Source: Octopus bimaculoides | Lineage: Eukaryota | Reading direction: 5' to 3' | Assembly (NCBI RefSeq): GCF_001194135.2 | Contig: NC_069005.1 | Coordinates: 34,348,153-34,410,182 of the forward strand | DNA length: 62,030 nt | In this document: positions 17,647 through 17,911 of the stretch, one piece after another | Layout: every line of letters starts with the position of its first letter | Numbering within the stretch: the stretch's first letter is position 1 | Notes under the pieces: model-generated | What the model was told of the DNA's origin: nothing | Databases searched by the model: none | Seen by the model: only the letters and a program-made list of their open reading frames with translations | Position numbers and translations under genes: made by a program

Positions 17647-17704
17647 TTAATACATTCGACAAAGGAGGAAAGAGTTCGAATCTTGAAAACTTGATATTCC
17701 GGGA
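17647..17704 (-). CDS. Candidate short terminal exon H after G: (S)PGISSFQDSNSFLLCRMY*
   Basis: 103 nt gap 17705-17807 starts GTAGGC and ends ttttttttttctttttttgcttttgttttcatag. Stop TAA at 17647-17649 overlaps ATTAAA. AATAAA on the minus strand at 16761-16766 and 16611-16616. Confidence 0.42.
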
Positions 17705-17807
17705 CTATGAAAACAAAAAGCAAAAAAAGAAAAAAAAAACGCAGGTGGGTGGTATCTAGCCTGACGCAAGTTCGCGTCCCACGAGATGCTGCCGCTGTGT
17801 TGCCTAC

Positions 17808-17911
17808 CTCCGGTTGCTTGTGCTGATGTGACGGGAAGTCCGGTGCACTTGTAATGACGAAGACTCGGCCAAACTCTTTAATCTGTCTTTTGCGTAGCCG
17901 ACCAGAACGGC
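17808..17911 (-). CDS. Candidate alternative exon G, paralogous C-helix: AVLVGYAKDRLKSLAESSSLQVHRTSRHISTSNR
   Basis: Strong acceptor attctcatactttctcccag, donor GAG|gtaggc. Phase-0 start matches exon E, 104 nt with no stop. Y-x3-R-L-K is in register with the start of exon F. Unique CpG-containing sequence amid repeats. Confidence 0.62.

What the first reader, a model, noticed from the sequence alone, without database searches (positions are those of the whole stretch)
17647..17911. Hidden duplicate C-helix exon: alternative last exons that swap the ligand-binding helix and tail of a CNG channel
Exon E ends at the B/C-helix hinge (DQPDAE, phase 0). It can join exon F (LIIREYGEKRLKEIEA + ~790 aa) or an unannotated exon G at 17808-17911 (AVLVGYAKDRLKSLAE…). 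G has a strong acceptor, the same phase, and Y, R, L, K in exact register with F. It is followed by a 103 nt GT-AG intron and a short exon H, giving a 53 aa tail; read-through of the G donor stops after one more codon (…SNRR*). ATTAAA and AATAAA signals follow. In CNG/HCN channels the C-helix caps the bound nucleotide and sets efficacy and cAMP/cGMP preference. One gene could thus make two channels with different ligand gating and with or without the large tail. The ORF track misses G because it has no ATG. I know of no description of this arrangement, but I could not search.
Basis: partly seen in the sequence, partly recalled or inferred. Interest (0 to 1): 0.82.

Follow-up and report, generated by a model that had tools for sequence, protein, structure and literature searches.

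The report
Octopus CNG channel: mutually exclusive C-helix exons
A 104-base exon that the octopus gene models I could see do not include is real, and is spliced in instead of a 2.4-kb exon, so one cyclic-nucleotide-gated channel gene makes two proteins that differ in the helix capping the bound nucleotide and in a roughly 790-residue serine-rich insert but share the same C-terminal end.

Summary
Exon G (17808-17911, minus strand) is real. RNA reads and assembled RNA contigs from four or more independent studies join exon E (ends 26638, …DQPDAE) to G at the predicted acceptor, and they leave G at the predicted donor.

G does not join "exon H" (17704), which has zero RNA coverage. G joins an exon outside the window (CAGCAGTGGCGAGGG…). 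The donor of exon F, at 6215, joins that same exon, so F is also internal (2,420 nt) and not terminal.

Both exons start in phase 0 and end with two extra bases, AG. Including both gives an immediate stop (AGT TGA). Skipping both shifts the frame. E-[G|F]-I is therefore a mutually exclusive exon pair.

Runs that hold G hold no F, and runs that hold F hold no G.

Argonauta hians has an orthologous G exon at the syntenic place. It keeps the same phase and splice sites. The helix codons show 9 synonymous against 4 non-synonymous changes. An unidentified invertebrate genome has the same short and long pair.

The gene is a CNGA-type channel of Octopus bimaculoides. Any functional difference in ligand gating is inferred, not shown.

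The parts
17808..17911 (-). Exon G. Short alternative C-helix exon, 104 nt, 34 codons plus AG: AVLVGYAKDRLKSLAESSSLQVHRTSRHISTSNR(S).
   Evidence: E-G junction reads in X21. RNA contigs X1-X4 end exactly at both exon borders. Argonauta orthologue has the same phase and splice sites.
6215..8634 (-). Exon F. Long alternative C-helix exon, 2,420 nt, 806 codons plus AG: LIIREYGEKRLKEIEA followed by about 790 aa of Ser/Thr-rich low-complexity sequence. It is internal, not terminal.
   Evidence: E-F junction in X25 and X5 contigs. Donor AG|gtagac at 6215 joined to the same downstream sequence as G in X25, X27 and X24. 94% identical to O. sinensis XP_036369310.1, which continues past this point.
26638..26734 (-). 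Exon E. Last common CNBD exon (…RRTADVRSLGYSELFVLSREDVLAALKDQPDAE). It ends in phase 0 at the start of the C-helix and is the shared splice donor for G and F.
   Evidence: This exon border is kept in many animals.
17778..17807 (-). Conserved intron stretch just 3' of the G donor (GTAGGCAACACAGCGGCAG…TCGTGGG). Candidate splicing-control element.
   Evidence: Apart from exon F, it is the only collinear blastn match between Octopus and Argonauta across the stretch compared (window 5000-27500 against L001 46500-80348), with 88% identity over 34 nt. Its function is inferred.
47781..47867 (-). Exon D. CNBD beta-roll with the phosphate-binding cassette (…GDFFGEIGILNLHGGIN-R).
   Evidence: tblastn with the O. 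sinensis protein and a splice-site check. RNA contig continuity with E.
57933..58087 (-). Exon C. Start of the CNBD (VTIFQECQPEFLHDLVLKMKAHIFTPGDLICRRGEVAREMFIIADGVVEII).
58654..58756 (-). Exon B. C-linker.
59914..60002 (-). Exon A. C-linker (DGAKFYMQSHNVPKELQKRVQRWYDYVWS).

Best explanation
The window holds the 3' half of a CNGA-type cyclic-nucleotide-gated channel gene of Octopus bimaculoides, on the minus strand.

After exon E, the spliceosome uses either the short exon G (104 nt) or the long exon F (2,420 nt). It then joins the same downstream exon I, which lies beyond the window's low-coordinate end.

Both exons open with a version of the CNBD C-helix, the helix that closes over the bound nucleotide. 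G follows it with an 18-residue linker. F follows it with about 790 residues of Ser/Thr-rich, probably disordered sequence.

Both exons start in phase 0 and end with two extra bases. Exactly one of them must be included to keep the frame. G plus F gives AGT-TGA, and neither gives a frameshift. Reading-frame surveillance therefore enforces exclusivity, and sample-specific regulators choose the exon.

Shown: both sets of junctions, the shared downstream exon, the frame logic, sample-specific use, and conservation in Argonauta.

Inferred: the two isoforms differ in how ligand binding is coupled to opening, through the non-contact residues of the helix. They may also differ in scaffolding, phosphorylation or assembly through the Ser-rich insert placed between the CNBD and the C-terminal helical domain.
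For: E-G junction: raw reads in X21 and contigs in X1-X4.

G donor at 17808 and F donor at 6215 both continue with the identical 30 nt CAGCAGTGGCGAGGGTGGTGGCACAGGAAG. This translates as S-SSGEGGGTG, matching the exon after F in O. sinensis (…SFGSRM|SGGDGGGAGRP…).

E-F junction.

Frame logic.

Mutual exclusivity by sample. Runs X1-X4 have G and no F. Runs X25, X27 and X24 carry F contigs at word depths of about 30, 26 and 5.5, X26 holds 96% of the sampled F words, and all four have no G. The index shows no overlap. X21 has 4 G-junction reads and no uniquely placed read over about 1,500 nt of F, the only reads there lying on internal repeats.

Conservation. The Argonauta hians G orthologue lies between E and F. 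It is 110 nt, has the same phase and an ag/gtaggc pair of splice sites. In the 18 helix codons it shows 9 synonymous against 4 non-synonymous changes. An unidentified invertebrate has a 152-nt G-like exon and a 902-nt F-like exon, both with length mod 3 = 2.

Family: best PDB hits are CNGA3, CNGA1 and TAX-4, E about 1e-52. Pfam finds cNMP_binding and Ion_trans in the orthologue.
Against: Exon I itself is not in the window, and only 30 nt of it were seen after G. That the rest of the G transcript is identical to the F transcript is inferred from the shared junction.

G-form depth is low: 3-4x in contigs, and 4 reads that probably come from 2 fragments. Contigs show presence, not absence.

Tissue identities are coded, so where each form is expressed is unknown.

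Sequence similarity of G to F is modest (4 of 16 identical). A duplication origin is plausible but not proven.

No protein-level or functional data exist.
Confidence: 0.88

Rival explanations
1. G is an alternative last-exon module (G, a 103-nt intron, then H, or G read-through) that gives a short 53-aa tail and its own poly(A) site, while F is the other terminal exon.
For: GT-AG boundaries and ATTAAA/AATAAA motifs are present in the sequence. F's frame does hit a stop one codon past its donor if read through.
Against: RNA depth is zero over 17749-17807 and over 17602-17706, which covers exon H, in eight runs. The G donor is joined to a different sequence that is absent from the window. The F donor at 6215 is used and joined to that same sequence. 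The O. sinensis protein continues about 130 aa past F.
Confidence: 0.03
2. The splicing switch is real, but its biological point is only the presence or absence of the roughly 790-aa Ser-rich insert (scaffolding, phosphorylation, localisation). Each exon simply has to carry its own copy of the C-helix because the helix straddles the exon border. The helix differences are functionally neutral.
For: The R-L pair is invariant in all 13 aligned orthologues and in both exons, and the hydrophobic residue four positions later is I in F and L in G. The largest difference between the isoforms is the insert.
Against: The G helix is under purifying selection in its own right, with 9 synonymous against 4 non-synonymous changes between Octopus and Argonauta. 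It keeps a distinct Y-A…D-R-L signature against F's Y-G…K-R-L in Octopus and Argonauta; the unidentified genome L002 keeps Y-A against Y-G (KVLLSYARQRL against EIIREYGQRRL). That is not expected if the helix sequence were free to drift.
Confidence: 0.35
3. G inclusion is low-level splicing noise or an unproductive isoform with no protein product.
For: Contig depth is low (about 3-4x). Only 4 junction reads were seen in the sampled 6% of run X21. G is absent from the O. sinensis, O. vulgaris and A. hians gene models.
Against: E-G-I is in frame. G is the only form detected in at least five runs from four or more studies. Exon, phase, splice sites and flanking intron are conserved in Argonauta with a coding-type substitution pattern.
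Confidence: 0.05

Closest known systems
Mutually exclusive exons in ion-channel genes (for example CaV1.2 exons 8/8a, NaV 5N/5A, AMPA-receptor flip/flop, Drosophila para and slo). Cited from general knowledge, not tested here.
   Same: There are two alternative exons between the same flanking exons, and each encodes a version of one structural element. The frame is kept only if exactly one is used, and the choice depends on the sample.
   Different: The two exons differ 23-fold in length (104 against 2,420 nt). One of them carries a large low-complexity insert as well as the swapped helix. The swapped element is the CNBD C-helix. I found no paper combining 'cyclic nucleotide-gated' with mutually exclusive exons for an animal channel.
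Vertebrate CNGA1/CNGA3 and C. elegans TAX-4 (solved structures 7lft, 8ev8, 6wej).
   Same: The C-linker and CNBD align end to end with E about 1e-52. The start of G aligns with the first residues of the CNGA3 C-helix (…PEAKKALE).
   Different: The octopus gene has two alternative C-helices. Its C-terminal helical domain shows no sequence match to the CNGA leucine-zipper (CLZ) region. The phosphate-binding cassette reads RRTADV rather than RRTANI. Subunit role and ligand are unknown.
CNGB1 long and short forms, with or without the glutamate-rich GARP part (general knowledge).
   Same: One CNG subunit gene yields forms with or without a large, probably disordered, low-complexity region in different tissues.
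   Different: GARP is N-terminal and does not change the binding domain. Here the insert sits between the CNBD and the C-terminal helices and comes with a different C-helix.
HCN2 C-helix residues R632, L633 and I636 (numbering from memory; a lead, not a test).
   Same: G's A-K-D-R-L-K-S-L lines up with HCN2 A-I-D-R-L-D-R-I. Both octopus exons keep the R-L and the hydrophobic residue four positions on.
   Different: The surrounding, non-contact positions differ between F and G (E/K, K/D, E/S, G/A). No structure or ligand data are available for the octopus protein.

Membership tests
Mutually exclusive exon pair | Both exons use the same upstream donor and the same downstream acceptor. | tested here: met
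   E-G and E-F. The G donor and F donor continue with the identical 30 nt.
Mutually exclusive exon pair | Transcripts carry one exon or the other, never both or neither. | tested here: met
   G contigs go straight to exon I, and F contigs come straight from E. Runs with G lack F and runs with F lack G. The limit is that contigs and sparse reads cannot exclude rare double or skipped forms.
Mutually exclusive exon pair | Frame is compatible only when exactly one exon is included. | tested here: met
   104 and 2,420 nt are both 2 mod 3. G plus F gives …SNRS*. E-I gives a frameshift.
Mutually exclusive exon pair | The exons are homologous (tandem duplication). | tested here: inconclusive
   4 of 16 identical and shuffle p about 0.001. 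Both fit the orthologue C-helix alignment with invariant R-L. Lengths differ 23-fold.
Mutually exclusive exon pair | Conservation of both exons in related species. | tested here: met
   Argonauta hians has G at L001:57525-57634 and F from 68904. The unidentified invertebrate L002/L003 has a 152-nt and a 902-nt pair. Schistosoma japonicum has a single exon.
   Both G and F have used donors that lead to a common downstream exon. There is no coverage of H or of read-through.
CNG channel, A-type subunit | C-linker plus cyclic-nucleotide-binding domain with phosphate-binding cassette. | tested here: met
   PDB CNGA3, CNGA1 and TAX-4 at E about 1e-52 over residues 1-181. Pfam PF00027 scores 56.5 bits against a cut-off of 27.5.
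CNG channel, A-type subunit | Six-TM pore domain with a CNG-type selectivity filter. | tested here: inconclusive
   Not in the window, because the upstream exons lie beyond 62030. The O. sinensis orthologue has PF00520 from S5 to S6 with TLTTIGDLPPP. S1-S4 are missing from that model.
CNG channel, A-type subunit | C-terminal leucine-zipper (CLZ) domain. | tested here: not met
   The tail of the orthologue gives no CLZ or CNGA match in Pfam or the PDB. It looks helical by eye only.
CNG channel, A-type subunit | Opened by cAMP or cGMP. | not testable with these tools
   Needs patch-clamp recording of expressed channels.

The most novel reading that the evidence does not exclude
The F/G pair is an ancient lophotrochozoan device. 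The pairing of a short 'Y-A..RL' exon with a long 'Y-G..RL' exon seen in octopods and in an unidentified, probably molluscan, genome would then predate cephalopods. On this reading it lets one CNG gene produce two channels that differ in cyclic-nucleotide efficacy or selectivity as well as in a large regulatory insert. That would be a natural C-helix swap experiment.
Probability: 0.25. Interest if true: 0.65.

Novelty: new member of a known kind. Interest (0 to 1): 0.45.

Why it matters
The C-helix is the moving lid of the binding domain in CNG and HCN channels, and mutations in it change agonist efficacy and selectivity. A gene that naturally swaps this helix, and adds or removes about 790 residues of Ser-rich sequence just after it, offers a ready-made pair of isoforms. 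These could be used to ask how the lid and the region behind it tune gating, assembly or localisation.

There is also a practical point for annotation. The short form is missing from the O. sinensis, O. vulgaris and A. hians gene models that the search returned. The O. sinensis gene is named 'serine-rich adhesin for platelets-like', so expression and evolutionary studies of cephalopod CNG channels are working with an incomplete and misnamed model.

Tried and rejected
- Exon H and the 53-aa tail were rejected. There is no RNA coverage, and the G donor joins another sequence.
- I searched the window for the downstream exon with the 30-mer at up to 3 mismatches and with all 10-14-mers. It is absent, so exon I lies outside the window or in an assembly gap.
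- A protein search with the E+G peptide returned only single-exon fragments and no protein containing G. The word index also missed the O. sinensis protein, so this absence is weak evidence.
- The O. sinensis and O. vulgaris loci could not be fetched because the genes span more than 100 kb.
- The Lamellibrachia locus showed no recognisable C-helix exon within 10 kb. The Batillaria contig ends before exon E. Schistosoma japonicum has only one C-helix exon.
- A test for a docking/selector RNA pairing between the conserved element after G and the neighbouring splice regions gave no clear signal, with z about -1.5 (one search timed out).
- CLZ homology of the common tail was not found.
- Literature searches found no description of this arrangement. 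One search was a malformed query.

Full report
**What is in the sequence**

- On the minus strand, exon E ends …GAC CAA CCC GAT GCC GAG|gtaggt at 26638 (…LKDQPDAE, phase 0).
- Exon F begins after ttttag at 8634 with LIIREYGEKRLKEIEA.
- Between them, after ctttctcccag, an open frame begins at 17911. It reads AVLVGYAKDRLKSLAESSSLQVHRTSRHISTSNR and ends at AG|gtaggc at 17808.
- The ungapped BLOSUM62 score of the first 16 residues is 20 (shuffle p about 0.001). Only 13 of 55,318 stop-free 16-mers in all six frames of the window score as well against F.

The observation of a second, correctly phased C-helix-like exon holds.

**Which gene this is**

- The translated exons in the window match CNGA3, CNGA1 and TAX-4 structures at E about 1e-52 across the C-linker and CNBD. 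The first residues of G align with the start of the CNGA3 C-helix.
- The O. sinensis orthologue is XP_036369310.1. It is 94% identical over F and is annotated 'serine-rich adhesin for platelets-like'. It carries Pfam Ion_trans and cNMP_binding.
- A UniProt fragment from Octopus bimaculoides is 99% identical to the window's exons, so the window is from that species.
- The window holds exons A-E, then G, then F: 60002-59914, 58756-58654, 58087-57933, 47867-47781, 26734-26638, 17911-17808 and 8634-6215.

**RNA evidence for G**

- In raw RNA-seq run X21, four reads cover 17833-17913 and continue with the reverse complement of the end of exon E. This is the predicted E-G junction, with a 2-nt ambiguity.
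- Exon-G words are present in RNA assemblies from several studies.
- Contigs in X1, X2, X3 and X4 match the genome exactly from 17808 to 17913 and nowhere beside it. Exon-E sequence lies upstream.

**Where G goes next**

- Past the G donor at 17808, the contigs in X2 and X3 continue for up to 205 nt with CAGCAGTGGCGAGGGTGGTGGCACAGGAAG….
- Depth is zero across 17602-17706 (exon H) and 17749-17807 (the read-through). The only signal in between, at 17707-17748, is a dispersed repeat with loose ends on both sides.

**F is not terminal**

- The O. sinensis protein runs on after …SFGSRM with SGGDGGGAGRPAGENG… and about 130 further residues ending in a helical segment.
- In the window, F ends CGT ATG AG|gtagac at 6215.
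- RNA contigs in X25, X27 and X24 stop matching exactly at 6215 and continue with the same 30 nt that follow G.
- G and F therefore share both the upstream exon E and the downstream exon I.

**Frame logic**

- G is 104 nt and F is 2,420 nt, so both are 2 mod 3 and both end in AG.
- E-G-I reads …STSNRSSSGEGGGTG, and E-F-I reads …SFGSRMSSSGEGGGTG.
- E-G-F stops at once (AGT TGA), and E-I is frameshifted.

This is the arithmetic of a mutually exclusive pair.

**Sample specificity**

- The index lists G words in X1-X4, X6, X7 and X49-X52, and F words in X24-X31 and X5, with no overlap.
- X1-X4 have no F contig.
- X25, X27, X24 and X26 have no G contig, although they hold F: contig word depth is about 30, 26 and 5.5 in X25, X27 and X24, and X26 holds 96% of the sampled F words.
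- X21 has G-junction reads and no uniquely placed read over about 1,500 nt of F. The only reads laid there fall on two internal repeats (6589-6612, 6733-6780) and run on as unlike sequence.
- Tissue names were coded, so I cannot say which tissues use which form.

**Conservation**

- In Argonauta hians (L001), E lies at 47425-47520 and F starts at 68904.
- Between them, at 57525-57634, is attag|GAG GTT CTG GTT GGT TAT GCC ACT GAC AGA CTT AAG…AAG AG|gtaggc. This encodes EVLVGYATDRLKNLVESSPSYVQWNSRYKSKLEKRK. It is 110 nt, so again 2 mod 3.
- Over the 18 helix codons there are 5 identical codons, 9 synonymous changes and 4 non-synonymous changes. The following linker is free to vary.
- The 30 nt after the donor are the only collinear non-coding match across the stretch compared (window 5000-27500 against L001 46500-80348).
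- In an unidentified invertebrate assembly (L002/L003), E is followed by a 152-nt exon (KVLLSYARQRLDETV…ARM+AG). A 902-nt exon follows 0.7 kb later (EIIREYGQRRLRETEEH…+AG). Each is preceded by AG and followed by GTA.
- Two other unidentified genomes show only a short exon within 10 kb.
- Schistosoma japonicum has a single C-helix exon.
- All annotated octopod models seen here use F: three O. sinensis isoforms, O. vulgaris and A. hians.

**How it most likely works**

*Shown.* The junctions, the shared flanks, the frame constraint, the sample-specific choice and the purifying selection on the G helix are shown.

*Inferred.* The G isoform is a compact channel in which the CNBD is followed, after a short linker, by the common C-terminal helical domain. 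The F isoform places about 790 Ser/Thr-rich residues between them.

In an alignment of 13 orthologues, the R-L pair of the helix is invariant and is present in both exons. By my recollection of HCN2 (R632/L633/I636) and CNGA1 (D604), the residue four positions on faces the purine. It is I in F and L in G.

So the direct contacts look conserved, and the differences lie at flanking positions (IIREYGEK against VLVGYAKD, and KEIE against KSLA). A change in efficacy or coupling is plausible. A change in nucleotide preference is less so, and neither is tested.

**Comparison with what is known**

Mutually exclusive exons that swap a structural element are common in ion-channel genes. I found no paper describing such a pair for the C-helix of an animal CNG or HCN channel, although the library is incomplete.

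I file this as a new member of a known kind, and the unusual feature is the extreme size asymmetry of the pair. The common tail is not a detectable CLZ domain, so I do not claim CNGA-type assembly rules.

**Verdict**

The hidden exon is real and conserved. The correct description is a mutually exclusive G/F pair inside the gene. Interest is moderate.

Noticed in passing
window 47788 (minus strand, exon D): The genome reads ATC (Ile, …LHGG-I-NRRTADV). RNA in X22 (3 raw reads) and in an X25 contig reads GTC (Val), seen in the loose end behind 26737. This is an A-to-G change in transcript sense, next to the phosphate-binding cassette. It could be A-to-I recoding or a SNP.
   Followed up: no
exon I, outside the window (first bases CAGCAG): The downstream exon starts with a tandem NAGNAG acceptor. 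O. sinensis isoform X1 differs from X2 and X3 by exactly one Ser at this junction.
   Followed up: partly
window 26540-26600, 17960-18080, 8750-8790: CA or CAT microsatellites sit next to all three regulated splice sites. One lies 35 nt 3' of the E donor, one 50-170 nt 5' of the G acceptor, and one about 115 nt 5' of the F acceptor. Argonauta has a (CAC)n tract at the same place upstream of G. This may be chance in a repeat-rich genome, or CA-rich splicing control.
   Followed up: no
window 17432-17586: A 155-nt RNA contig in X5 (depth 3.5) lies wholly inside the G-F intron and has no junctions. It could be pre-mRNA or an unrelated transcript.
   Followed up: no
O. sinensis orthologue: The gene is named 'serine-rich adhesin for platelets-like', a misnomer driven by the composition of exon F. 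Its model starts in S5, and a separate 151-aa Ion_trans gene call lies just upstream, so the model is probably split.
   Followed up: partly
window 6584-6616 and 6743-6776 (inside exon F): These are short stretches with very high RNA depth, many loose ends and apparent G>T (6598) and A>G (6761) differences. They are low-complexity repeats shared with many other transcripts, not variants of this gene.
   Followed up: partly
window, 22 runs of N (for example 1961-2536, 20433-20957, 37186-37752): There are many assembly gaps, mostly flanked by microsatellites. Sequence, including possible small exons, could be hidden in them.
   Followed up: no
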